Shown: positions 13,613-62,599 of the stretch, piece by piece
Numbering within the stretch: the stretch's first letter is position 1
How the letters are laid out: each line of letters opens with the position of its first letter
Virus record (IMG/VR): IMGVR_UViG_3300024308_000188
Span: 62,001-126,000 of that record
DNA length: 64,000 nt
Reading direction: 5' to 3' (one strand)
Position numbers and translations under genes: made by a program
The notes under the pieces: model-generated
What the model saw: only the letters and a program-made list of their open reading frames with translations
The model's database searches: none
What the model was told of the DNA's origin: nothing

Positions 13613-14917
13613 TTAGGCCGCTTCCTTAAGTTTCTTCTTGGCCGCAGCAACTGTCTCACTTCTAGTTGATTCTGTTTTAGCAGCTTTTTTCTTGCTTGCT
13701 TCAATTTCAGCAATCGCCTTGTCAAGTAAAACTTTGTTACTACGAGTTTCTTTTGCGTAAACAGCAGCCAATTTGATTTCCTCTTTAGTCAAAGGATTTT
13801 TCTTTGGCATACTTCTGATTTTGATGTTATTAGCCCACAATTGTTTTTGTAACCACTCAGGCATATCAGCATACTGATCTTGCATGATAGTATCTACAAC
13901 TTTATCAATGTTTACTTTGTGGCCCAATTCTTTACTTTGGAACTCAAGACTCTTACGAACTAAAGCTTCCATACTTAAGAAACTAAAGTTCCACGCCTTA
14001 ACATCCCGCTCGTTTCCACCAATATCAAAATCCATTTCAGGTGCGCTAGTAAATTTATAATCAAACTTTTCTTCTACCAGAGTTTTAGCTCCAGTAGTCA
14101 TAGCACGTTCGATAAATTTAACTGCTAACCAGAACCACTCGTAACCAACTTCAACAGTTAAACTGTCGTGTACGGAAACATTAAGGTTCATTAATGGATA
14201 TTTACCAGTGTCCAAGAAATGTTGATATTTGTATTTATCAATCAAACGTATTGCCAACATCATAAGGTCACTACCAAAACCTTGAACTGGACTGTTAACC
14301 GCTTGACGTAAACAACGATTGATAATACTGTTTAAATGTTTGTCCTTGCTTCTGTAATCAGTTTGACGATCAACAAGTTTCTTGAACATCAGTGGCCATA
14401 ATGTACGACGACGACCAACAGGACTTTCAACAAACAAATTGTCAATCGCATCTTTCTTACAGGTATCAAACCAACCGTAACCAACAGGGAATCTTTCAAG
14501 AAACTTCGCTTTAAGTTCACGAATTTTCTCAACAGTCTGACCAGTAGATAAGGATAAACCATCATCACCTTGTTGATAAATCAAACCGAAGATAACTGTT
14601 TTTACTGCGTTACGAATAGGCTTACTTACTTCATGGATTGGAAGTCCAAAGAAGTAACTAGCGTTGATACGGTGAACGTCACCTTCAATTTCTATTCGGT
14701 GAGCAATCCAAGGATCTGGAACAAACTTATAGCGATTACGTAAATCAGCACCAACTTGGAAAACATCAGCAACATTTTTATCGCCACTAATAATAGACCA
14801 ACCACGTACTTCGTGAGCCGAGTAGTCAACCTTGATCAATAATGTTCCAGGTTGAGAAATAAGCAGACGTTTAATATGGTAGCCTAATTCATCACGGCTA
14901 GGTACTTGCTGGAGATT
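13613..14917 (-). CDS. polA: Family A DNA polymerase, exon 2 (434 aa)
   Basis: Frame stays open 26 codons upstream of the tracked TTG: NLQQVPSRDELGYHIKRLLISQPGTLLIKVDYSAHEVR (motif A); RNAVKTVIFGLIY (motif B); VHDS (motif C). Confidence 0.92.
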   Translation of the reverse strand, partial: NLQQVPSRDELGYHIKRLLISQPGTLLIKVDYSAHEVRGWSIISGDKNVADVFQVGADLRNRYKFVPDPWIAHRIEIEGDVHRINASYFFGLPIHEVSKPIRNAVKTVIFGLIYQQGDDGLSLSTGQTVEKIRELKAKFLERFPVGYGWFDTCKKDAIDNLFVESPVGRRRTLWPLMFKKLVDRQTDYRSKDKHLNSIINRCLRQAVNSPVQGFGSDLMMLAIRLIDKYKYQHFLDTGKYPLMNLNVSVHDSLTVEVGYEWFWLAVKFIERAMTTGAKTLVEEKFDYKFTSAPEMDFDIGGNERDVKAWNFSFLSMEALVRKSLEFQSKELGHKVNIDKVVDTIMQDQYADMPEWLQKQLWANNIKIRSMPKKNPLTKEEIKLAAVYAKETRSNKVLLDKAIAEIEASKKKAAKTESTRSETVAAAKKKLKEAA

Positions 14918-15240
14918 CTTTATTCTTTCTTAAGATATGTTCGCAAAACATATCCCGATGATGCGAGTTTCAGCAATCCTCGTCTTACACATCGCTCCAT
15001 TCTTTACAAATGGAAGTTGAGACTATATCAAGGCCATATTTATTTATAATAAACTTAGGCCGCTACCATTTTGAGTGATCATTTGCTTATCACCCTACTC
15101 GCATTTCAGCGATAGTCGTTAGGCATTTACAAACTTTCGTTTGATTTAGCACGGTAGGTTCTTCCCATGTATTCTCTACACAGGACTCTTCCCCGTTTAG
15201 GTAGCTTTCGACATGCAGTTTCCTACATGAAGCCCAATCT
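14918..15240 (-). ncRNA. Group I self-splicing intron (subgroup IA2-like), 323 nt, no homing-endonuclease ORF
   Basis: 5' exon ends in U (CCU) and the intron ends in G. P10 AGAUU/AAUCU; P2 CAUGUAG-GAAA-CUGCAUG; P3 GCUACC/GGUAGC; P7 GACUAU/AUAGUC within R (AACGACUAUC) and S (GAUAUAGUCU); P7.1, P7.2, P8 and P9 hairpins. Removal restores TGRTSASNP-NLQQVP in frame. Confidence 0.92.
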
Positions 15241-17205
15241 AGGATTTGATGCACTCGTCCGACCAGTAACAACAGCTTGGTAACTATAGTTAGGTCTTAA
15301 TCTACGTGTGTGCTTGAAGTCTTTATCAGTAGCAAACAATTTAATAAAACTATTCACATAACTGTTTCGTAACTTCTGAGCTTTTTGTAAATCCGTGAAG
15401 TTCTTAACGATTTTAACGTCTTTGTGCTTGGCCTGAAATTGTTTATCAATCTGAGGCATTGGCTGGTCAGTACCTTTACGCTTTTTCTTGGTAGAAAAGT
15501 TTACTGGTTCCAATTTACAAACGTCAAAGAACAATATTTGTTTGTGTTCTTCCTTGCTTAAATCGAAGTTATTCAGTTCAACAGTACCGAACAATCCGCG
15601 TTGAGGCGCACCACGATTTTTAGCAAGTATCTTATTGGCTTTACGAACTTCATCACTGTTTTTGATATTTAGTTCACGTTCTTTGATGATTTGATTCACT
15701 GGACTATCTTTTGTTTTTAGATAGAACAAGTAATCAACATCACAAAGCGCACCAGTAGATTCCAAAATAGAGAACGAATGTATCTGATCTCCAACAATGG
15801 TTGAAACTGTTTTCTGGTACTTTTTAAATCCAATATCTTTCGCTCTGCGTAATTGCTGATGAAAGATCAACCAAGGAACAACAACGTCGAGACTACAATA
15901 TTGAAGTACAGGTTCAGTCAATGGAGTTTGTGCAATGTGTGCTCGGTTTTCTTTACCAAATGGATTGTCAAGGAAAGCAGTGCATCCATATTGCATAGAA
16001 AGATTACCTAAATTAAAGTAACCTTTACCTGTGGCAGTAGATAACACTTTCATGTTTTCATCTAAGATGAATTCACCAGCAGCAATATCCCACATATCAG
16101 CTTTGAAATGTCTGATGTCAAAGTTTGCTCTCATTACATTAAGGTCAAACTTTCCGTTGGTGGTAATATGCAACTTGTTTTTATTCTTTCTCTCAAAAAA
16201 CATTCGCATAAGCACTTTGATTCGATCAAGCTCCTTACGACTAAATGGAGTATCAAAGTGATAAATTGGAATTACATAAGCGTTCTTAGCATCACAACAT
16301 AATTGCACAGTCTGAACTTTATTAAGAACCTTACTAAGATCCTCGGTTTCAGTATCGACTGCTACGTATTCAGCAGCAGCCATCTTTTTCAGAATGCGCT
16401 CTACTTCGGAAACTTTTGTCACATAATGAGTTTTATACTTTGGAACGAATTTGTTCCGTTTCATTATGTGTACAGGTTGAATGTTGTAGCGATTAATACC
16501 GCCATCAAGAGCTGTTACAAGATTTCTGGCTGAATAACCACTAAGATAATAATTCTCTTTTGTTTTGGTGCTAAACACTGTGTTAAATGAAAGAGAAGGA
16601 ACTACAACAAAATCATGCTCTATTGTTTTTCCATCTTTATTCTTTATACTTACGTTAGCATCAACAGCTTGACCTAAGTAGTTGACAAAGTTCTGCTTAG
16701 ATTTTTGATAAGCAAGTGGACACAAATAAGTAAAAGGATCTTGTCCAAATGTAACAACAATGTCAGGCTTGTACTCACAAATAGTTTGCTTTAAATGCCG
16801 TGCAAAATCCTGATTGCTTTCATCAAGCGTATCTGCGTAAGCTTTACCATAAGTTTTAAACTGATTAAAGTTTGTTGCTACCCAATCATAGTCACTTTCA
16901 GCACATTCCGATCTATAATACTCGTGTGCAAGTTTACAAAGCAATAAAAACTTTTCACCTGTCGCACCAGAAAGCAAACGATTGCTCTCAAGATCTTCTG
17001 TAGGTACATGATCGAGTACAAATAATATTCTTTTCTTAGCATCTGGATTTTTATACCGGACTGCTTTCACGTTGTACAGATTTCCATCTGAAAAGCGTGA
17101 CTTAAGAGCCTCCCTTATGGATTTTTTAGGTTTATAGCCTAAGTCTATCCAACGAAGTGGAATCTCTTGTTTAGCATGTTTTTTCTTTGCTGAAACAACT
17201 GCCAT
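15241..17205 (-). CDS. polA: Family A DNA polymerase, exon 1 (UDG-like domain + 3'-5' exonuclease + thumb); spliced product ~1089 aa
   Basis: ExoI VAVDTET, ExoII NGKFD, ExoIII YCSLD; ends YQAVVTGRTSASNP; N-terminal ~200 aa align with a family-4 UDG fold. Confidence 0.92.
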
Positions 17206-17884: not shown

Positions 17885-20800
17885 TTACATGCGTAAATCA
17901 TCAATTTTTGCAACAAGTTGATCTTGGTTAGTGATAACGTAACCAGCTTCTTTCAACTCTTTAAGTTTGCTCATGAATTCGCGTTTACCAGCTGCGAAAT
18001 AAATGTGCATACCAGGATGAAGCTTCCAAGTTCCACCTACACCGCCACCAGGAATTGCTTTTCCTTCAAGACGTTTCGCAAATGGGTTAGTTGCTTTGTC
18101 CACAACAATACGTAAACGGTCGTGCATCGTTACCGGATACATTTTAACCATTTTAGTATTCTTGCTTTCACGCAAACGCGCACGGAAAAAATCTTGAACA
18201 TCATTCATGATTTTCTTAGCATGACGTTGGTTAAAGAGTTGTTTAGGATCGATCTTCTTGTCACTAAACATATCGTAAACAGCAACCAAACGATTATAAG
18301 TTGGGCCATCAATTTCCAACTGTCCTTTGTCTGATTTTTCTTCAATCCAATTTAAGAAAGCGTAGTACGCAGGGAACGCTTTAAAGTCTACGTATACGAA
18401 ATCTTCAAAGTTTTTGAAGCCAAACTTCAACAAGCCATCTGCATCTGCGTCATTATTTGTAACGTGCATACACAAGAAGCCGTTATAGAAAGAAGGAATT
18501 AATTTAATCTTCTTAGGTTTAATCGCTGGAGCCGCAGGTGCAACAGGACGTTTAGGTGGAACACGACCTGAAAGTGTACCAGCAGGAACTACGCTAACGG
18601 TTGGCCGTACACGCGGAACTTTTGGAACAACTTCTACACCTTGATTTACTGGGCGTTTTTTCTCAATGTTGTCTTTGCGGATATTTGCACGTTCGCGTTC
18701 GCGTGTCTGACGACGAGCATCTTCACGTTCTTGCTTGATGCGTTGTTCCTCAGCCTGTTCTCTCTGAGCGCGAATACGATCAGCTTCTGCCTGTTGTTTA
18801 GCTGCCGCACGTTCCATCTGAAGTTTTTCAGTTTTCGTTCCCCACATTTCTGTAGGTTTAAAGAACTGATCATAAACTTTTCCGGAAACTTTTGTTGCAA
18901 TATAAACCATACTGATAGGCATCAGAACAGGAGGTATATTTTCCAGCATGTTACGTTCATGATATTTAATACGAACACTATGAATCGGTCTGCGTGGATC
19001 AGAAATCATTTCTCCTGGATTATCAGGATCAGGAATTTTCCGAGTACGTTGCAAACCAACAATTGTACCAGTACCAAAACCAGTACGAACTGGACTACCT
19101 TTCAACACTGCTTCTGCATCTTCTAAAATTTCTTCGATGCGCGTTGGAATATATTCTGACAATTTAACCAAACCAAATCCTTCTGGATCAGGAATATTTT
19201 GATTCGGCATTGTTGGAATTTGTGGCATCGTTTTGAAATCTTTTGGAATAGGTGGAATATCAAGATCCAACATTTCCGCACGAGTTGTTTTACGCATTTC
19301 CGTAAATTCGCTTGCTTCGATGTTTGCTAATAAAGCTTTTGCACCAAAGTAATCGTTTACAATACGAGTTTCACCATTTTCCGTTTCTTCTAACGTACCA
19401 CGGTAATCCTCTAATTCACAGCGTTCAAACAACAAATCCAAAGACATCTTGATTGGTTTCAAGACGTATTCGTTTAAAGGTTCATAACGTCTGTTGCCTT
19501 TTTCGTTGAAGCGAATACTGTCAACAGTTTTCCACATCAAACGAGCAACTTTACCAACTTCCAATGTACCGCCAGTCATAATCCAATCGACGTAAATAAC
19601 TTCACGCGCCATATCTCCAGGTTGACCATCAGTAAATTTTGCTGCGGCCGGATCTGGACGGAAAATACGTGCTGTACTTTGTTCGTAATCACCAGGTGAC
19701 CACGGAGTATCAACACGAATAATACGACTTGCCATTTGAAGGTTGTAACCTTCTGTAATAGCTTGCTCGTTAGCTACGAAAATTTCTACATCTTTTGATT
19801 TCATGAAGTCTTGTAAGTTTTGCTTACGTTGATCTTCTGGAATCTGACCGTGGAACATACGCGCTTTGCGTTTATACTCAGGAGGTAACGAATCGAAAAT
19901 ATATTTCGTGTTACCTGTGTAGCGGCAGAAAATAAGTACCTTACCTTTAATCTCCGGTTTCCAGTTATCCAAATCTTGATCTGGTGGCGTAGAAGTTTTC
20001 GGAGTCAATCGACGTTTTATAGTCGGTAATTCGTCTGGCCCAAGTGGAATTGGACGACGCATATACAGTTGACCTTTATATTCAACTATATCGTACTCTT
20101 TCGCTTGCATTTCACGATCCCACTGAATAATACGTCCAGTTTGATCTGCGTTTGCATCATACTTAACACTTTCAAAATGTTCACGTAAGCGTTCTATTAC
20201 CATCGAAACTTTTGATGGAACAAAATCGCCTTGTCTTACACCAGCAATAGCTGCCAACTCTTTGAAGTAAGAATCACCCCAAGGATTTGTAATTAGCTGC
20301 TCAACACGTTGGAAGTATTTTTTGTCGATAGTAGGTAACATAGAAGCATTGATAACACCACTGGCATCAACAACTTTTCCACGACCACCACCGCCACCTT
20401 CTTCGTCATCATTTTCTTCCAATTCATCATCGAAAGAGTTTTCATCATCGTCATCTTCGTCGTCATCTGCTTTGCCGATGTCGCCAGAAAGAATGATAGA
20501 TTTAACTTCGTTGATAACGTGTTCGTAAGCTTCTTGGTGTAACTTGTTACCAAGTTTATTCATTGTTTCGTCTGTAGGATCGAACAAACGAATTTGAATA
20601 AATGTATCAATTGGATTAGGTAACATGAATGCCCACTCTTTACGTTTCAGAGTGATCATGCTGCAATACTTACCAAGTTTGGTACGCATTTTACCTGGAC
20701 CATCTTCAGCAGAAAGATTGATTCCAAGTTTATCCATTTCATCAGGAGTTTTAAGTGCGTAAGCATTCATTAAGGCAGCTTGGCCAATAACATCAGCAAG

Positions 20801-23800
20801 AATACCGTGAACCAAAGTACCTGTGGCTAAACGCGCATAAGCAACGCCAGTCATAGTAAATACTTCTTTGATTACAGTATGAATTGTTGAGGTCTTGCCA
20901 CTACGCATAAATGTTTTTGCTTTATGACTTTCATCAAGCAACACATAGTTAGGATTGAATTGTTTTAAGAATTCAACACCACCACTGATTTTAATTTTGC
21001 GCGTACCAAAAGTCAAATCGAATGTATTTGTTTTACTAAGGAAGTGAATACCAGCAACAATAATTGTGTTACGTGGAGCATCCTTAATAATCTTGGTCAG
21101 TAAATCCAGACCCCAAATTTTAACGATTTTGGTTGTGATTGGAATAGTATTCCAGTTACCGTTAGTAAACTTGGCAGTATCTTCACACCAGTTTGCACAC
21201 AATCCATCTGGAGCAAGTACGAGTGGAACGAAGTGATCTGCTTTGTGTTTCTCGGCCAAACATAAAATGTCTGTAATACCAATTAATGTTTTACCGCCAC
21301 CTGGACTTACGTCGAGAATTGCATACTTCGGCGCTTTTCGTAAAAACTGGTGAGCTTTTACTTGGTGAGGAAACATTTGAGGTTTTTTGCCGTTAACAGC
21401 AACAATACCTGGAGCAACAATATCTTCAACATCAACATCAGAATCTTGTTGATAGCGGTCAAACATTTCTTCAGCACGTTCAAAATAATCCAACGCTTTT
21501 GGAACATACTTTGAAAATATGTAAGCAAGCGGTAGAACATCCGTACTGATATAGTTGAACGAAGGCAAGTTTTTGTTGTTTAAATCTTTTTCGTCACGCT
21601 TAGGATATAACAGCTCTTTCTTCGGAATCAAAGTAATATGCTTACACATATTCTTGAATAAACAACCACCAAAGTAAGTATAGATGTTATTAAACTTGGC
21701 CATAGTAGTATCAGCACTACGGAAGTTTAAATGAGCAGGATGGTCAGGCAATTCAGTTTTGACATTACTAAAGCCGACTTCATCTGCAATCATGGCGTGA
21801 AGATTTGTTCCGGGAGTACCTTCGGCATCAGCCAATGCTTTCAACAGGAAAGCAAGTACAACGTAGCCTTGACCATATAAATGGTCAGCAAGCAAAGAAC
21901 TTCCATCAATTGTATCAGGAATTAAATTGCTATACAGATCGAAGTCTAACGGTGTCCCTTCCAAGGTAAAAGAAGTGTAATTCTTTTCTTTCTTGGTTTC
22001 TTCGATCAATTGAACAATGTTTGGAACCACACCTTCTTTTGCATAAAAGCTGTAGGTTTCAAATAACTTGATAAGACGCTGGTTCAAGAAAACACGCAAA
22101 TAAATTGGAGCATCTACCAACTTTTTACGTTCTTCAGGAATGTTCAAATCTGGTGCAAGTTTTCTGATTTGCAAAATACTGTTCAAGTTTGTCAGTGTAT
22201 GCAGTGCATCAGGATCATGGCGGAACTCAGAAAGAGAAGTTAAAATATGTTTCTTCTGAGATTTTTCTCCTGGTTCTTTAAAATCAAAACCAAGGAAATC
22301 TGCCATAATCAGATCGTCCGGTGGAGTACAACCGTTCAGATCTTTTGGAACTAAGTTATCGGTTTCACTTGCGTAAAGCAGAGTGTTGTAATCCCAGTTA
22401 AATGCAATCAGCGCACCGCGCATTGATTTTAACTTAGAGTTTTTATCTGCCATTAAACCGTTTGTGCCAGCGATATTTAATTTCTCAGGATTACTTGCGG
22501 TAACAGATGCACCAGCAGGACTACCAGCAGGTAAACCTAATTCGTAAGAAAGTGACAGCATTTCTTCATATGCTTGCTCATAAGCAAGTGCATTATCATT
22601 TGAAGAATCGGCAGGACTTGGAATGTAACCGAAACGTCCATCAGGCATAATCACAAGACCATCATCATCTGATTTACTTTCAGAAACATGATAGCCAAAT
22701 TTCTCACGATAACCAGCAAGTTCTTGAATACGACTTGGTGGAATAACATACTGTGCAGTACGACGAGGATCGTAGTTAATGCCTTTAGCATGTTTTGGTT
22801 TTAAGAAAGCACCAGCCCACTGAGTAACCCAAGAGCTTAAACAATAAAGTGCTTTATCGCCAGTTTCGCTCTGACACATAAAGTTTACGATAGCGCGTTC
22901 AAAACTTAATGAAATAGATCCACCAACGCGAGGAGTAAATACAACTGTTGGTGTAATTAAAGTTTCGTTTTTCGGACGAGGAACTTCAATAGATTCTGTT
23001 CCAGAAATTTGTGCGCGAGTTTGACTTGAATTCCAAGAAGCCCAAGGCTGCATTAACTCTGGCTCTTGTTCGATAATAACCAGTACGTTCAGGAAACTCT
23101 TATACAAAGTAACTGAACCATCTAAGTTATTAAAGAAGTTTAGTGGAAAGCCAATCAGTTTACTTAATTCGTTGTTCCAACTTTTAAAATTGTAATCAAC
23201 TGGAAATTGACAAAGACGACGTTGGTGCGCGTTATCTAAAGTCAACACACCTTTATCACTACGCATAGAAACCAGTTCACAGATTTTCTGTGCAGCCGCC
23301 ATAATGCGTTGGGCAATTGGTGTTGAATAGTTTGTTTGCATCATACCTAAATGACGCGCATCATTCGGACGAGTCGGTAAAGCAGGGAATGGTTTGATGT
23401 GAAGTTTTAAACCGCCACGACCATATTGTCCACTAAACAGAATATCGTAACCGCCTTTATAACGTGAGGAAGGTTTGATAATAGTGTTTGCGGTTGGACG
23501 ATCTTCAAAAGGCATATCTTTTGGAAAGCGACTATCTTCAGCATCTTCGCTCTGTGTATCGCGCTGTGTACTCAAAGCAATTAACAAATGGCGAACCATA
23601 TCTTCGCTTGGTTCATCGTTCATTTGAATAATATTAGATGCCAATGCTTGAAGCTCAGCAGTTACTTGGCTGTCAGGCATATCGTCTAAAATATTTGCTT
23701 GCTCTAAAGCTTTACGACAGAAAGCAAAGAAATTGTTAAGGCCCATGCTGACAGAAAGTGTTTTACTTGCAGCCTCACGGAAACCGTCCATTTTGAAACC

Positions 23801-23953
23801 AGCTTCAGTAGGTCTGTTATTAACAGTGTAAAATGCTTCTGTATACAGCTTTTTTAATTTCGGATCTAACTCAACAGGAGCAACAGCTTTAGTCAACAAC
23901 TCTTCCGCTGTAGCACTCGTCGAAGTAAATTCTCCGTCGATTGTAATTGCCAT
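17885..23953 (-). CDS. Giant SNF2-family helicase/ATPase (2022 aa)
   Basis: MFPHQ, VSPGGGKT, LLDESH, ATGT, KVLIFCRY, FHGQ, EGYNLQMASRII, PWSP..EQSTARIFR; ~860-aa unrecognised N-terminal region. Confidence 0.85.
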   Translation of the reverse strand: MAITIDGEFTSTSATAEELLTKAVAPVELDPKLKKLYTEAFYTVNNRPTEAGFKMDGFREAASKTLSVSMGLNNFFAFCRKALEQANILDDMPDSQVTAELQALASNIIQMNDEPSEDMVRHLLIALSTQRDTQSEDAEDSRFPKDMPFEDRPTANTIIKPSSRYKGGYDILFSGQYGRGGLKLHIKPFPALPTRPNDARHLGMMQTNYSTPIAQRIMAAAQKICELVSMRSDKGVLTLDNAHQRRLCQFPVDYNFKSWNNELSKLIGFPLNFFNNLDGSVTLYKSFLNVLVIIEQEPELMQPWASWNSSQTRAQISGTESIEVPRPKNETLITPTVVFTPRVGGSISLSFERAIVNFMCQSETGDKALYCLSSWVTQWAGAFLKPKHAKGINYDPRRTAQYVIPPSRIQELAGYREKFGYHVSESKSDDDGLVIMPDGRFGYIPSPADSSNDNALAYEQAYEEMLSLSYELGLPAGSPAGASVTASNPEKLNIAGTNGLMADKNSKLKSMRGALIAFNWDYNTLLYASETDNLVPKDLNGCTPPDDLIMADFLGFDFKEPGEKSQKKHILTSLSEFRHDPDALHTLTNLNSILQIRKLAPDLNIPEERKKLVDAPIYLRVFLNQRLIKLFETYSFYAKEGVVPNIVQLIEETKKEKNYTSFTLEGTPLDFDLYSNLIPDTIDGSSLLADHLYGQGYVVLAFLLKALADAEGTPGTNLHAMIADEVGFSNVKTELPDHPAHLNFRSADTTMAKFNNIYTYFGGCLFKNMCKHITLIPKKELLYPKRDEKDLNNKNLPSFNYISTDVLPLAYIFSKYVPKALDYFERAEEMFDRYQQDSDVDVEDIVAPGIVAVNGKKPQMFPHQVKAHQFLRKAPKYAILDVSPGGGKTLIGITDILCLAEKHKADHFVPLVLAPDGLCANWCEDTAKFTNGNWNTIPITTKIVKIWGLDLLTKIIKDAPRNTIIVAGIHFLSKTNTFDLTFGTRKIKISGGVEFLKQFNPNYVLLDESHKAKTFMRSGKTSTIHTVIKEVFTMTGVAYARLATGTLVHGILADVIGQAALMNAYALKTPDEMDKLGINLSAEDGPGKMRTKLGKYCSMITLKRKEWAFMLPNPIDTFIQIRLFDPTDETMNKLGNKLHQEAYEHVINEVKSIILSGDIGKADDDEDDDDENSFDDELEENDDEEGGGGGRGKVVDASGVINASMLPTIDKKYFQRVEQLITNPWGDSYFKELAAIAGVRQGDFVPSKVSMVIERLREHFESVKYDANADQTGRIIQWDREMQAKEYDIVEYKGQLYMRRPIPLGPDELPTIKRRLTPKTSTPPDQDLDNWKPEIKGKVLIFCRYTGNTKYIFDSLPPEYKRKARMFHGQIPEDQRKQNLQDFMKSKDVEIFVANEQAITEGYNLQMASRIIRVDTPWSPGDYEQSTARIFRPDPAAAKFTDGQPGDMAREVIYVDWIMTGGTLEVGKVARLMWKTVDSIRFNEKGNRRYEPLNEYVLKPIKMSLDLLFERCELEDYRGTLEETENGETRIVNDYFGAKALLANIEASEFTEMRKTTRAEMLDLDIPPIPKDFKTMPQIPTMPNQNIPDPEGFGLVKLSEYIPTRIEEILEDAEAVLKGSPVRTGFGTGTIVGLQRTRKIPDPDNPGEMISDPRRPIHSVRIKYHERNMLENIPPVLMPISMVYIATKVSGKVYDQFFKPTEMWGTKTEKLQMERAAAKQQAEADRIRAQREQAEEQRIKQEREDARRQTRERERANIRKDNIEKKRPVNQGVEVVPKVPRVRPTVSVVPAGTLSGRVPPKRPVAPAAPAIKPKKIKLIPSFYNGFLCMHVTNNDADADGLLKFGFKNFEDFVYVDFKAFPAYYAFLNWIEEKSDKGQLEIDGPTYNRLVAVYDMFSDKKIDPKQLFNQRHAKKIMNDVQDFFRARLRESKNTKMVKMYPVTMHDRLRIVVDKATNPFAKRLEGKAIPGGGVGGTWKLHPGMHIYFAAGKREFMSKLKELKEAGYVITNQDQLVAKIDDLRM

Positions 23954-25140: not shown

Positions 25141-25506
25141 TTAACCTCCAAATAGACGTTTGTTCTTTCTTGTTTGTAAAGCTTTCAACAGATGTTTACC
25201 TGCCTCATTTGCCTTACCTCGTTTTTTAGAATGACAGGTAGCGCATAAAGTTTCAAGATTTGAAAGAATATTCAAACCTCCTCTTGCAACAGGAACAATG
25301 TGATCAACAGTCAGTTGAACAGCACTAGGATTATTAGGATTATCCTCAGCACCACAACAAACACAAGTATAATCATCACGTTCTTTTACAATAGCTTTTA
25401 CTCTTTCCCATTCAGGGCCAGATCTTAAATCGGATTTTGGTTTAAGTGGGCCGGAAAGTCTATTGCCGGATTTTTTAAATCCTCGGTTTCTCTGAGCAAT
25501 TCCCAT
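25141..25506 (-). CDS. HNH endonuclease
   Basis: RDDYTCVCCG...LTVDHIVPVARGG...SNLETLCATCHSKK. Confidence 0.9.
   Translation of the reverse strand: MGIAQRNRGFKKSGNRLSGPLKPKSDLRSGPEWERVKAIVKERDDYTCVCCGAEDNPNNPSAVQLTVDHIVPVARGGLNILSNLETLCATCHSKKRGKANEAGKHLLKALQTRKNKRLFGG

Positions 25507-62524: not shown

Positions 62525-62599
<75 letters not shown>

What the first reader, a model, noticed from the sequence alone, without database searches (positions are those of the whole stretch)
14918..15240. ORF-less group I intron splits the DNA polymerase gene
Seen: the track shows two ORFs, but excising 14918-15240 gives TGRTSASNP|NLQQVP, the canonical PolA motif. All core helices can be paired by eye (P1 with U.G, P10 AGAUU/AAUCU, P2 with GAAA loop, P3, P7, P7.1/7.2, P8, P9). 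No endonuclease ORF is present, so this is a minimal 323-nt ribozyme that is either immobile or mobilised in trans. Group I introns in phage polA genes are known (SPO1 family; T7-like phiI/W31).
Basis: partly seen in the sequence, partly recalled or inferred. Interest (0 to 1): 0.72.

Follow-up and report, generated by a model that had tools for sequence, protein, structure and literature searches.

The report
Gene-less self-splicing intron in phage polymerase
A 323-base self-splicing (group I) intron with no gene of its own interrupts the DNA polymerase gene of an uncultured jumbo phage at the classic phage intron site. This is a known kind of element, but sister strains carry the same intron with a nuclease gene, or lack it.

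Summary
On the minus strand, 15240..14918 (323 nt) separates two family-A DNA polymerase reading frames. Removing it gives one 1089-aa protein that aligns without a gap to six uninterrupted homologues, at TGRTSASNP|NLQQVP. A 97%-identical contig from an unrelated wastewater run lacks exactly these 323 bases.

The insert is a subgroup IA2 group I intron. It has P1 (U.G), P10, P2-P9.2, P7.1/P7.2 joined by GUA, and a terminal G. Rfam scores it below its cut-off (30.6 bits, local E 1e-5). Three diverged homologous introns at the same site give 21 compensatory, 6 one-sided and 0 broken pairs out of 53.

The site is E. coli Pol I P674|N675, the published site of the SPO1, SP82, Bastille and Pf-WMP3 introns.

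No endonuclease ORF is in the intron. A 99%-identical sister phage (319.5 kb, complete) has the same intron with a 167-aa I-HmuI-like HNH gene replacing P6a, and both forms co-occur in one metagenome. Relatives in Erwinia-type jumbo phages carry an HNH gene in P8 instead.

Splicing itself was not shown. Verdict: a real intron, a new member of a known kind, of modest interest.

The parts
15241..17205 (-). polA exon 1 (655 codons). It holds an N-terminal region without a Pfam hit, the 3'-5' exonuclease domain, and the start of the polymerase domain, ending ...TGRTSASNP (CCU).
   Evidence: DNA_pol_A_exo1 at E 1.1e-13; DNA_pol_A profile positions 25-126.
14918..15240 (-). Group I (IA2) intron, 323 nt, with no ORF. 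Intron nt n corresponds to window position 15241-n.
   Evidence: RF00028, 30.6 bits, E 1e-5; exactly this stretch is absent from the X5 contig; helices, covariation and z-score.
13613..14917 (-). polA exon 2 (434 codons plus stop), starting NLQQVP. It carries the rest of the polymerase domain.
   Evidence: DNA_pol_A profile positions 127-362, E 3.3e-37. The first in-frame start codon is 26 codons inside (14839), so the conserved NLQQVPSR... can only be translated after splicing.
15233..15243 (-). P1 and the internal guide sequence. Exon CCU (15243..15241) pairs with intron GGG (nt 6-8), with U.G at the splice site. The loop AGAUU (nt 1-5) is the P10 guide.
   Evidence: Read from the sequence. 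All three intron-bearing lineages have CCT here, against 1 of 9 intron-less relatives.
14913..14917 (-). P10 partner: the first five bases of exon 2 (AAUCU) are complementary to intron nt 1-5 (AGAUU).
   Evidence: The same AATCT is present in the Alexandravirus intron-bearing allele, whose guide sequence is identical.
15223..15225 (-). In-frame UAG, 16-18 nt into the intron, inside the 5' strand of P2. It ends translation of unspliced RNA before the ribozyme core.
   Evidence: the ORF ends at 15223.
15212..15229 (-). P2 (nt 12-29): 7 bp with a GAAA loop.
   Evidence: 4 of 7 pairs compensatory against L017.
15200..15205 (-). P3 5' strand (nt 36-41, GCUACC). It pairs with nt 174-179.
   Evidence: present in the MFE fold.
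15062..15067 (-). P3 3' strand (nt 174-179, GGUAGC).
15123..15196 (-). P4-P5-P6-P6a domain (nt 45-118). Nt 85-118 (15156..15123: P4' strand, P6, and P6a with its GAAA loop) is the block replaced by 567 nt with an HNH gene in the sister strain.
   Evidence: joint 15122/15157 with 567 letters between, in runs X4 and X2..
15112..15117 (-). P7 5' strand (nt 124-129, GACUAU). It pairs with nt 215-220 and forms a pseudoknot with P3.
   Evidence: Invariant in all homologues. Matched by RF00028.
15074..15111 (-). P7.1 (nt 130-141) and P7.2 (nt 147-167), joined by A-GUA-G. This is the hallmark of subgroup IA2.
   Evidence: The criterion is taken from PMC3428280.
15032..15061 (-). P8 (nt 180-209): a GGCC/GGCC stem with an A+U-rich loop. 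Alexandravirus and L017 carry an HNH ORF at this place.
   Evidence: A 1-nt indel is tolerated here in run X4.
15021..15026 (-). P7 3' strand (nt 215-220, AUAGUC), within the conserved GAUAUAGUC.
14933..15015 (-). P9 (nt 226-246), P9.1/P9.1a (nt 247-285) and P9.2 (nt 286-308).
14918..14918 (-). Terminal G (omega G) of the intron.
   Evidence: The boundary is fixed.

Best explanation
[quoted passage not shown] It sits in the family-A DNA polymerase gene of an uncultured jumbo phage.

How it most likely works:
- The gene is transcribed as one pre-mRNA.
- The intron folds into the P3-P8 and P4-P6 core.
- A free guanosine attacks after the exon's last U, which is held in P1 as a U.G pair (CCU/GGG).
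- The guide sequence AGAUU then aligns the 3' exon (P10), and the terminal G is exchanged.
- The exons are ligated to ...AAU CCU|AAU CUC..., restoring the conserved motif TGRTSASNP-NLQQVP.
- Unspliced RNA yields only a truncated exonuclease-domain protein, because a UAG lies 16 nt into the intron.

Mobility:
- The intron has no homing-endonuclease gene, so it cannot move by itself.
- It can be copied into intron-less alleles only during mixed infection, with an endonuclease supplied from elsewhere.
- The obvious source is the 99%-identical sister strain, whose copy of the same intron carries an I-HmuI-like HNH gene in P6a.
- The ORF-less form is more likely the state before that gene invaded than a deletion product.

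Shown: the boundaries, the restored ORF, the fold with covariation, the absence of an ORF, the HEG-bearing and intron-less alleles, and the identity of the site with the SPO1-type site.
Inferred: catalytic activity, mobilisation in trans, and the order of events.
For: Boundaries and restored ORF:
- The spliced ORF of 1089 aa aligns gap-free to six uninterrupted homologues.
- The Pfam profile is split at 126|127.
- The X5 contig lacks exactly the 323 nt.
- Of 129 phage records matching the junction peptide, 123 are uninterrupted.

Ribozyme:
- RF00028 matches over its full length (positions 1-253) at E 1e-5.
- Every helix was verified.
- The MFE fold recovers P2, P3, P4, P5, P6, P6a, P7.1, P7.2, P8, P9, P9.1 and P9.2, with z = -4.1.
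- Across the window, the Alexandravirus intron and the L017 intron, 53 pairs split into 26 invariant, 6 one-sided, 21 compensatory and 0 broken.
- The core matches about 199 phage records, mostly Herelleviridae, usually in stretches with no annotated gene.
- CCT precedes the site in all three intron-bearing lineages.

Site:
- P|N corresponds to Klenow chain index 351, which is residue 674.
- PMC3428280 places the SPO1, SP82, Bastille and Pf-WMP3 introns at site 674.

Mobility context:
- No ORF with a family hit lies in the intron.
- The own record has no HNH_3, phrog_59 or GIY-YIG gene, no homologue of the sister's HNH, and no second intron copy.
- The sister genome G001 has the 857-nt allele with a 167-aa ORF. 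That ORF hits HNH_3 (E 1.2e-10), phrog_59 (E 3e-27) and I-HmuI 1U3E (E 5e-4).
- Both alleles are present in run X2.

Ancestral state:
- The compact P6a hairpin with a GAAA loop is shared with Alexandravirus and L017.
- At the two informative sites in the tract next to the insert, the window agrees with both outgroups and G001 does not.
Against: - No RNA evidence of splicing exists. The only joined molecule has CCA rather than CCU before the joint, and it comes from a library that may contain DNA. It is probably an intron-less allele, not a spliced transcript.
- Rfam's curated threshold is not met (30.6 against 50 bits). The whole-record search with RF00028 returned nothing.
- P1 is short: 3 bp plus two A-U pairs beyond a mismatch.
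- The own record is incomplete (214.5 kb, CheckV estimate 85%, against 319.5 kb for the sister). A homing endonuclease could therefore lie in the missing part.
- The polarity 'ORF-less is ancestral' rests on hairpin architecture and only two informative sites.
Confidence: 0.9

Rival explanations
1. The polymerase is made as two separate polypeptides from two genes, and the 323 nt are an ordinary spacer. There is no splicing.
For: Two ORFs are seen mechanically. GenBank annotates the homologous Alexandravirus arrangement as separate 'hypothetical protein' genes.
Against: - The first possible start codon of the downstream frame is 26 codons past the junction. Those 26 codons (NLQQVPSR.E.G..IKR...) are nevertheless conserved against the uninterrupted homologues.
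- The break falls inside a contiguous conserved motif, at one point of the Pfam profile.
- The spacer has a complete group I core with 21 compensatory pairs.
- A near-identical allele lacks exactly the spacer.
Confidence: 0.03
2. It is a decayed group I intron that no longer splices, so the polA gene of this metagenomic phage is dead or the record is defective.
For: The match is below the Rfam threshold. P1 is short. No homing endonuclease is present. No RNA evidence exists.
Against: - No helix is broken, and U at -1, the terminal G, P7 and J8/7 are all intact.
- The same intron is present in abundant populations in several samples (word depth up to 337 in run X4) and in a complete 319.5-kb genome.
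- polA is the only family-A polymerase frame seen here, and its exons are kept free of stops.
Confidence: 0.04
3. The intron is real, but the ORF-less state is derived. On this view the homing-endonuclease gene was lost from an HEG-bearing ancestor (the decay phase of the homing cycle), rather than never having been there.
For: - HEG loss is the expected fate once an intron is fixed. This rests on general knowledge of the homing cycle, not on a test here.
- All three other known members of this intron family carry an HNH ORF.
- The P8 loop is A+U-rich, and its flanks match those of the ORF insertion in L017 and Alexandravirus.
Against: - With respect to the P6a gene of the sister strain, a deletion would have had to recreate a P6a hairpin of the same architecture as in Alexandravirus and L017.
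- At both informative sites in the adjoining tract the window has the outgroup state.
- With respect to a former P8 gene, nothing argues either way.
Confidence: 0.3
4. The insertion is an assembly artefact, that is, a chimeric contig.
For: The window comes from a metagenome assembly.
Against: - The ORF-less form is assembled independently in run X2: a contig covers 15093-15186 with no differences.
- The intron with identical flanks occurs in runs X4 and X2 and in G001.
Confidence: 0.01

Closest known systems
Group I introns in the polA genes of Bacillus phages SPO1, SP82 and Bastille (encoding I-HmuI, I-HmuII and I-BasI), and of cyanophage Pf-WMP3 (I-PfoP3I)
   Same: - Subgroup IA2.
- Same host gene and same insertion point, E. 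coli Pol I site 674, between the P and N of DPNLQ.
- The sister strain's intron ORF is an I-HmuI-like HNH of phrog_59. That is the PHROG family PMC11878797 reports for HNH genes in Bastillevirinae polymerase introns.
   Different: - The window's copy has no ORF at all.
- The host is a jumbo phage of about 320 kb, related to phages of Gram-negative Erwinia, Dickeya and Yersinia.
- No splicing or nicking data exist for it.
Unannotated intron in the polA gene of Erwinia phage pEa_SNUABM_40 (Alexandravirus, MZ443780) and of two IMG/VR relatives, plus IMG/VR contig 3300031414_000055 (L017)
   Same: - Same insertion site and the same intron lineage.
- 76% (Alexandravirus) and 67% (L017) nucleotide identity over the core.
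- The first 55 nt are identical to Alexandravirus.
- P6a has the same architecture.
   Different: - They are 1220 and 1028 nt long, with a 261- or 226-aa HNH ORF in the P8 loop.
- The Alexandravirus copies end in A, not G.
- The polA exons are only about 50-60% identical in protein.
T4 td, nrdB and nrdD introns, and the Twort-, K- and A511-type Herelleviridae introns
   Same: IA2 core with P7.1/P7.2. The stretch around J6/7-P7 matches many Staphylococcus, Listeria, Enterococcus and Bacillus phage records at 84-93%. The resemblance to td itself is recalled from memory and was not tested here.
   Different: They sit in other genes, and no similarity extends beyond the core.
ORF-less phage introns mobilised by an endonuclease encoded elsewhere ('collaborative homing', 'trans homing')
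   Same: An intron without its own endonuclease sits at a site that a related endonuclease may target. Papers on this concept were located by title and abstract only (PMC3984707, PMC2790892, PMC6083498).
   Different: In those cases the endonuclease gene is recalled to stand free in the same genome; this comes from memory, not from those papers. Here none was found in the 214.5 kb held, and the candidate helper sits inside the sister strain's copy of the same intron. No functional test was done.
Introns in the polA genes of T7-like phages phiI and W31
   Same: IA2 introns in a family-A polymerase gene, with the HEG in P6a, as in the sister strain here.
   Different: They are inserted at site 881, not 674, and they carry an ORF.

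Membership tests
Group I intron (Rfam RF00028) | Covariance-model score at or above the curated gathering score (50 bits) | tested here: not met
   No hit at gathering. The match scores 30.6 bits over model positions 1-253, E 1e-5 in a 1-kb search. The whole-record search returned nothing.
Group I intron | Conserved core helices P3-P8 and P4-P6, with the P3/P7 pseudoknot, supported by covariation | tested here: met
   All helices were located. Of 53 pairs, 26 are invariant, 6 one-sided, 21 compensatory and 0 broken across three lineages. MFE z = -4.1.
Group I intron | U as the last exon base, paired with G in P1 | tested here: met
   CCU|AGAUUGGG. CCT is present in 3 of 3 intron-bearing lineages against 1 of 9 intron-less relatives.
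Group I intron | Terminal guanosine (omega G) at the 3' splice site | tested here: met
   ...AAUAAAG|AAUCUCC. The boundary is fixed.
Group I intron | Excision restores an uninterrupted, conserved reading frame | tested here: met
Group I intron | Guanosine-dependent self-splicing | not testable with these tools
   No transcript data show the CCU-AAU junction. The X5 contig has CCA and may be DNA.
Subgroup IA2 | P7.1 and P7.2 between P7 and P3', linked by G-U-A | tested here: met
   P7.1 is nt 130-141, GUA is nt 143-145, and P7.2 is nt 147-167. The criterion is as stated in PMC3428280.
polA site-674 introns (SPO1 type) | Insertion between the codons equivalent to E. coli Pol I P674 and N675 | tested here: met
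   Query residues 77-156 align to Klenow chain residues 328-407. The equal lengths suggest no gap, though the alignment itself was not inspected. That puts the P before the junction at chain index 351, which is residue 674. The site list comes from PMC3428280. The SPO1 sequence itself was not inspected.
Mobile (homing) group I intron | Intron-encoded homing endonuclease | tested here: not met
   The only ORFs overlapping the intron, of 60 aa and 47 aa, have no Pfam or PHROG hit. The sister allele does carry an HNH ORF.
Collaborative or trans homing | An endonuclease encoded elsewhere that cuts the intron-less site | tested here: inconclusive
   No HNH_3, phrog_59 or GIY-YIG gene is in the 214.5 kb held. 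One small PF01844 HNH lies 10 kb away. The HEG-bearing allele co-occurs in run X2. Cleavage specificity is untested.

The most novel reading that the evidence does not exclude
One natural phage lineage preserves three states of the same polA site. They are an intron-less allele (run X5), an ORF-less intron (the window, also in run X2) and the same intron newly invaded by an I-HmuI-like HNH gene in P6a (G001, runs X4 and X2). Relatives of the intron in other jumbo-phage genera carry a different HNH gene in P8. On this reading the ORF-less ribozyme came first, and two endonuclease genes colonised different loops independently. That would be a field record of how mobile group I introns are assembled. 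It would also show an ORF-less intron persisting as a target-site 'immunity' allele beside its nuclease-bearing sibling.
Probability: 0.4. Interest if true: 0.5.

Novelty: new member of a known kind. Interest (0 to 1): 0.35.

Why it matters
Annotation. The polymerase of this phage is one 1089-aa protein, not two genes. The same correction applies to Erwinia phage pEa_SNUABM_40, whose exons and intron ORF are deposited as three 'hypothetical proteins'.

Biology. The classic polA site-674 intron niche was known from Bacillus phages and a cyanopodovirus. This finding extends it to jumbo phages related to those of Gram-negative hosts.

Experimental handle. Three alleles are available at 97-99% exon identity: intron-less, ORF-less, and HNH-bearing. 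The HNH-bearing and ORF-less forms occur in the same samples; the intron-less allele comes from another study. These are ready-made material for testing trans-mobilisation, target-site immunity and the order of intron and endonuclease acquisition.

None of this changes the current understanding of group I introns.

Tried and rejected
- Rfam at gathering threshold over the whole window found only a tRNA.
- RF00028 over the whole 214.5-kb record returned nothing, even for this intron, so that route is insensitive here.
- Megablast of the region against phage records gave one partial hit only.
- A second copy or a related intron elsewhere in the own record was sought with nhmmer and blastn using the four-intron core alignment. 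Only the known locus was found.
- A helper endonuclease in the own record was sought with HNH_3, phrog_59, GIY-YIG and the sister's HNH protein. None was found.
- One small PF01844 HNH ORF lies 10 kb away. Nothing links it to the intron.
- The sequence of the intron-less allele was sought by exact junction pattern. No match was found in viral contigs or metagenome contigs.
- The 5' intron pattern in metagenome contigs returned only the window's own contig and one already known.
- RNA evidence: the four 'RNA-Seq' wastewater runs are labelled METAGENOMIC and may hold DNA. The joined contig has CCA, not CCU, before the joint, so I do not count it as spliced RNA.
- Co-conversion in Alexandravirus: intron-bearing L001 and intron-less L020 differ by about 11% throughout. 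The cluster of changes next to the site is therefore not clearly above background.
- The P1 pairing proposed by the Rfam alignment (exon AUCAA with UUGGG) was rejected. It puts the U.G pair 7 nt upstream of the junction fixed.

Full report
**What is in the sequence**

The gene lies on the minus strand. An ORF of 660 aa (17205..15223) ends ...YQAVVTGRTSASNP, followed by five more codons (RLGFM) and UAG. The frame that starts at 14917 reads NLQQVPSRDELGYHIKRLL... and runs to 13613.

Joining 17205..15241 to 14917..13613 gives a 3270-nt ORF of 1089 aa. It aligns without any gap at the junction to the uninterrupted polymerases of six jumbo phages: Rivsvirus, Yoloswagvirus, Salmondvirus, Sasquatchvirus, Yersinia phage fHe-Yen9-02 and phage NCTB. 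Overall identity is 48-54%.

Pfam's DNA_pol_A profile stops at position 126 at the end of exon 1 and resumes at position 127 at the first residue of exon 2. The first-stage coordinates, 14918-15240, are exact.

**Independent delimitation**

The window is part of a 214.5-kb IMG/VR record from a subsurface metagenome. In run X5, from a wastewater sample of a different study, a 3129-nt contig about 97% identical to the window passes from 14917 straight into exon 1. It lacks exactly the 323 nt.

The 22 bases next to the joint were reported as 'other letters'. Their reverse complement reads CGT ACT TCC GCT AGT AAT CCA, which is RTSASNP in other codons. That is 10 synonymous differences in 21 nt, including two six-fold serine codon switches. 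By contrast, the contig shows no listed difference from the window in the first 68 nt of exon 2, and differs by 1.7-4.3% elsewhere.

The contig has CCA rather than CCU before the joint, and the library, although called RNA-Seq, is 'METAGENOMIC'. I therefore read it as an intron-less allele and not as spliced RNA. Either way it fixes the boundaries.

A 79%-identical polymerase in another IMG/VR contig (L016) is also uninterrupted. So are 123 of the 129 phage records that match the junction peptide.

**Is it a group I intron?**

Rfam finds nothing at its gathering score. In E-value mode RF00028 matches 15258..14995 over the whole model, at 30.6 bits and E 1e-5 for the 1-kb search.

By inspection, checked by script, the RNA has:
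- P1 (exon CCU with GGG, U.G at the splice site)
- an internal guide AGAUU complementary to the first five exon-2 bases (P10)
- P2 (7 bp, GAAA loop)
- P3, P4, P5 and P6
- P6a (GAAA loop)
- P7, and P7.1 and P7.2 joined by GUA
- P8, P9, P9.1/9.1a and P9.2
- a terminal G

An unconstrained MFE fold recovers every one of these helices except P1, P10 and P7. P1 and P10 involve exon bases outside the folded 323 nt. P7 is pseudoknotted with P3. The fold is 4.1 SD more stable than dinucleotide shuffles.

**Covariation**

Three further introns sit at the same codon boundary:
- In a sister genome (G001).
- In Erwinia phage pEa_SNUABM_40 and two IMG/VR Alexandravirus-like contigs (L001, L011, L012).
- In a 38.8-kb IMG/VR contig (L017).

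After removing their ORF-bearing loops, I counted 53 pairs in ten helices across the window, Alexandravirus and L017. Of these, 26 never vary, 6 vary on one side only, 21 show compensatory double changes and none is broken. The helix register was set by hand, which favours the model somewhat, but the signal is large.

The J6/7-P7 core also matches about 199 phage records. These include Staphylococcus K-like, Listeria A511-like, Enterococcus and Bacillus phages, usually in stretches with no annotated gene. One of these phages is Bacillus phage SIOphi, in which PMC11878797 demonstrated intron splicing experimentally; which SIOphi gene the match lies in was not checked.

P7.1/P7.2 linked by GUA is the criterion for subgroup IA2 used in PMC3428280.

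**The site**

The proline before the junction aligns with Klenow chain index 351, which is E. coli Pol I residue 674. This assumes an ungapped 80-residue match and a chain that starts at residue 324.

PMC3428280 states that the SPO1, SP82, Bastille and Pf-WMP3 introns lie at site 674, phiL7 at 676, and phiI/W31 at 881. This is therefore the SPO1-type site, not the T7-like one. I did not inspect the SPO1 sequence itself.

**No ORF, but a sibling with one**

Only mechanical ORFs of 60 and 47 aa overlap the intron, and neither hits Pfam or PHROGs.

The held record has no HNH_3, phrog_59 or GIY-YIG gene and no second copy of the intron. A small PF01844 HNH ORF lies 10 kb away at 25141..25506.

Laying public runs showed a variant in two samples of the source study (X4 and X2). 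In it, intron nt 85-118 (15156..15123: the P4' strand, P6 and P6a) are replaced by 567 other bases. In X2 this form (depth 7) stands beside the ORF-less form (depth about 13).

An exact-pattern scan recovered the variant. It is IMG/VR contig 3300033997_000243, 319.5 kb with terminal repeats and rated complete, and 99.0-99.7% identical to the window around polA. Its intron is 857 nt long.

The variant intron holds a 167-aa ORF. The ORF matches HNH_3 (E 1.2e-10), phrog_59 (E 3e-27) and the solved structure of I-HmuI, the SPO1 polA-intron nickase (E 5e-4). It is at most 36% identical to any HNH gene in isolated phages.

The Alexandravirus and L017 introns carry a different phrog_59 ORF (261 and 226 aa), placed in P8. 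It is 34% identical to the P6a one over 70 residues.

**Which state came first?**

The window's compact P6a (UAAAU-stem-GAAA-stem-UAAAUGCC) has the same architecture as in Alexandravirus and L017. In the tract next to the insert, the window and G001 differ at several positions. At the two informative ones (the U before the GG of the P3' strand, and the A in CCUAAG of P8) the window agrees with both outgroups.

This favours the ORF-less P6a as the older state and the HNH block as an invasion or cassette exchange. The evidence is thin, and I put this at about 0.6. Whether P8 ever held a gene in this lineage cannot be told.

**Mechanism**

Splicing by the standard two-step guanosine pathway is inferred from the anatomy.
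- Unspliced RNA would be translated only to the UAG at intron nt 16-18, giving an exonuclease-domain fragment.
- The 26 conserved codons at the start of exon 2 precede any start codon, so they can be expressed only after ligation.

Mobility must depend on an endonuclease supplied in trans, most plausibly by the co-occurring HNH-bearing allele. The dense synonymous divergence confined to the last 21 nt of exon 1, between the intron-bearing and intron-less alleles, has two possible readings:
- co-conversion from a foreign donor, or
- selection on the endonuclease target.

I cannot separate the two.

**Verdict**

This is a genuine ORF-less IA2 group I intron at the classic polA site. Its interest is modest, and lies mainly in the natural three-allele series and in correcting the annotation of related phages.

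Noticed in passing
L001:4205-4235 (Erwinia phage pEa_SNUABM_40), and L012 (reverse strand, just before the match to exon 2): The homologous Alexandravirus intron ends ...GACCACAAA|AATCTCC. The base before the only frame-restoring 3' splice site is A, not the near-universal terminal G. Two separate records show this. No in-frame alternative using a nearby G keeps the NLQ residues. This is unexplained.
   Followed up: partly
L001:1129-5522 (MZ443780, pEaSNUABM40_00176 to 00178): polA exon 1, the intron HNH ORF and polA exon 2 are deposited as three 'hypothetical protein' genes, and the intron is not annotated. Among the phage records searched, only this Erwinia phage carries the intron. Alexandra, pEa_SNUABM_22, pEa_SNUABM_16, pEa_SNUABM_3 and others are uninterrupted.
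   Followed up: partly
window 15186-15240 (intron nt 1-55), against L001:3001-3055: The first 55 nt of the intron are identical to the Alexandravirus intron. The rest of the core is about 70% identical and the polymerase exons only about 58% identical in protein. L017 differs here, with compensatory changes, so constraint alone does not explain the identity. This suggests recent exchange between intron lineages.
   Followed up: no
window 15241-15262, against the X5 contig: There are ten synonymous differences in the last 21 nt of exon 1 between the intron-bearing and intron-less alleles. The first 68 nt of exon 2 show none. This may be a co-conversion tract or an endonuclease-target variant.
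   Followed up: partly
window 15544-15694: The window and sister genome G001 differ at 16 positions in this 150-nt patch of exon 1. They are identical for the 300 nt between the patch and the intron, and nearly identical across exon 2 (1 difference). This looks like a mosaic recombination patch.
   Followed up: no
L013:2501-3200 (Escherichia phage U1G, N4-like) and L014:2501-2557 (Pseudomonas phage CRC2): Intron nt 4-61 match at 83-85% in N4-like phages. In U1G the match lies between two hypothetical genes, just upstream of an annotated 'HNH homing endonuclease # Phage intron'. A related intron may sit in a different gene there.
   Followed up: no
window 25141-25506 (-): A 121-aa ORF carries a classical HNH motif (PF01844, E 5.9e-14). 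It is the only HNH-type nuclease found in the 214.5-kb record. Nothing links it to the intron.
   Followed up: partly
window 15047: Run X4 has one extra C in the P8 loop. This is a length change tolerated inside the 323 nt, as expected for non-coding RNA.
   Followed up: no
window 62525-62599 (+): tRNA-Gly (anticodon TCC). It is the only Rfam hit at gathering score in the window.
   Followed up: no
window 17885-23953 (-): A 2022-aa ORF lies upstream of polA. Its counterpart in Dickeya phage JA11 is annotated as a putative ATP-dependent DNA helicase.
   Followed up: no
window 16428-17205 (-), polA residues 1-259: The N-terminal 260 residues or so of the polymerase, ahead of the 3'-5' exonuclease domain, have no Pfam match.
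   Followed up: no
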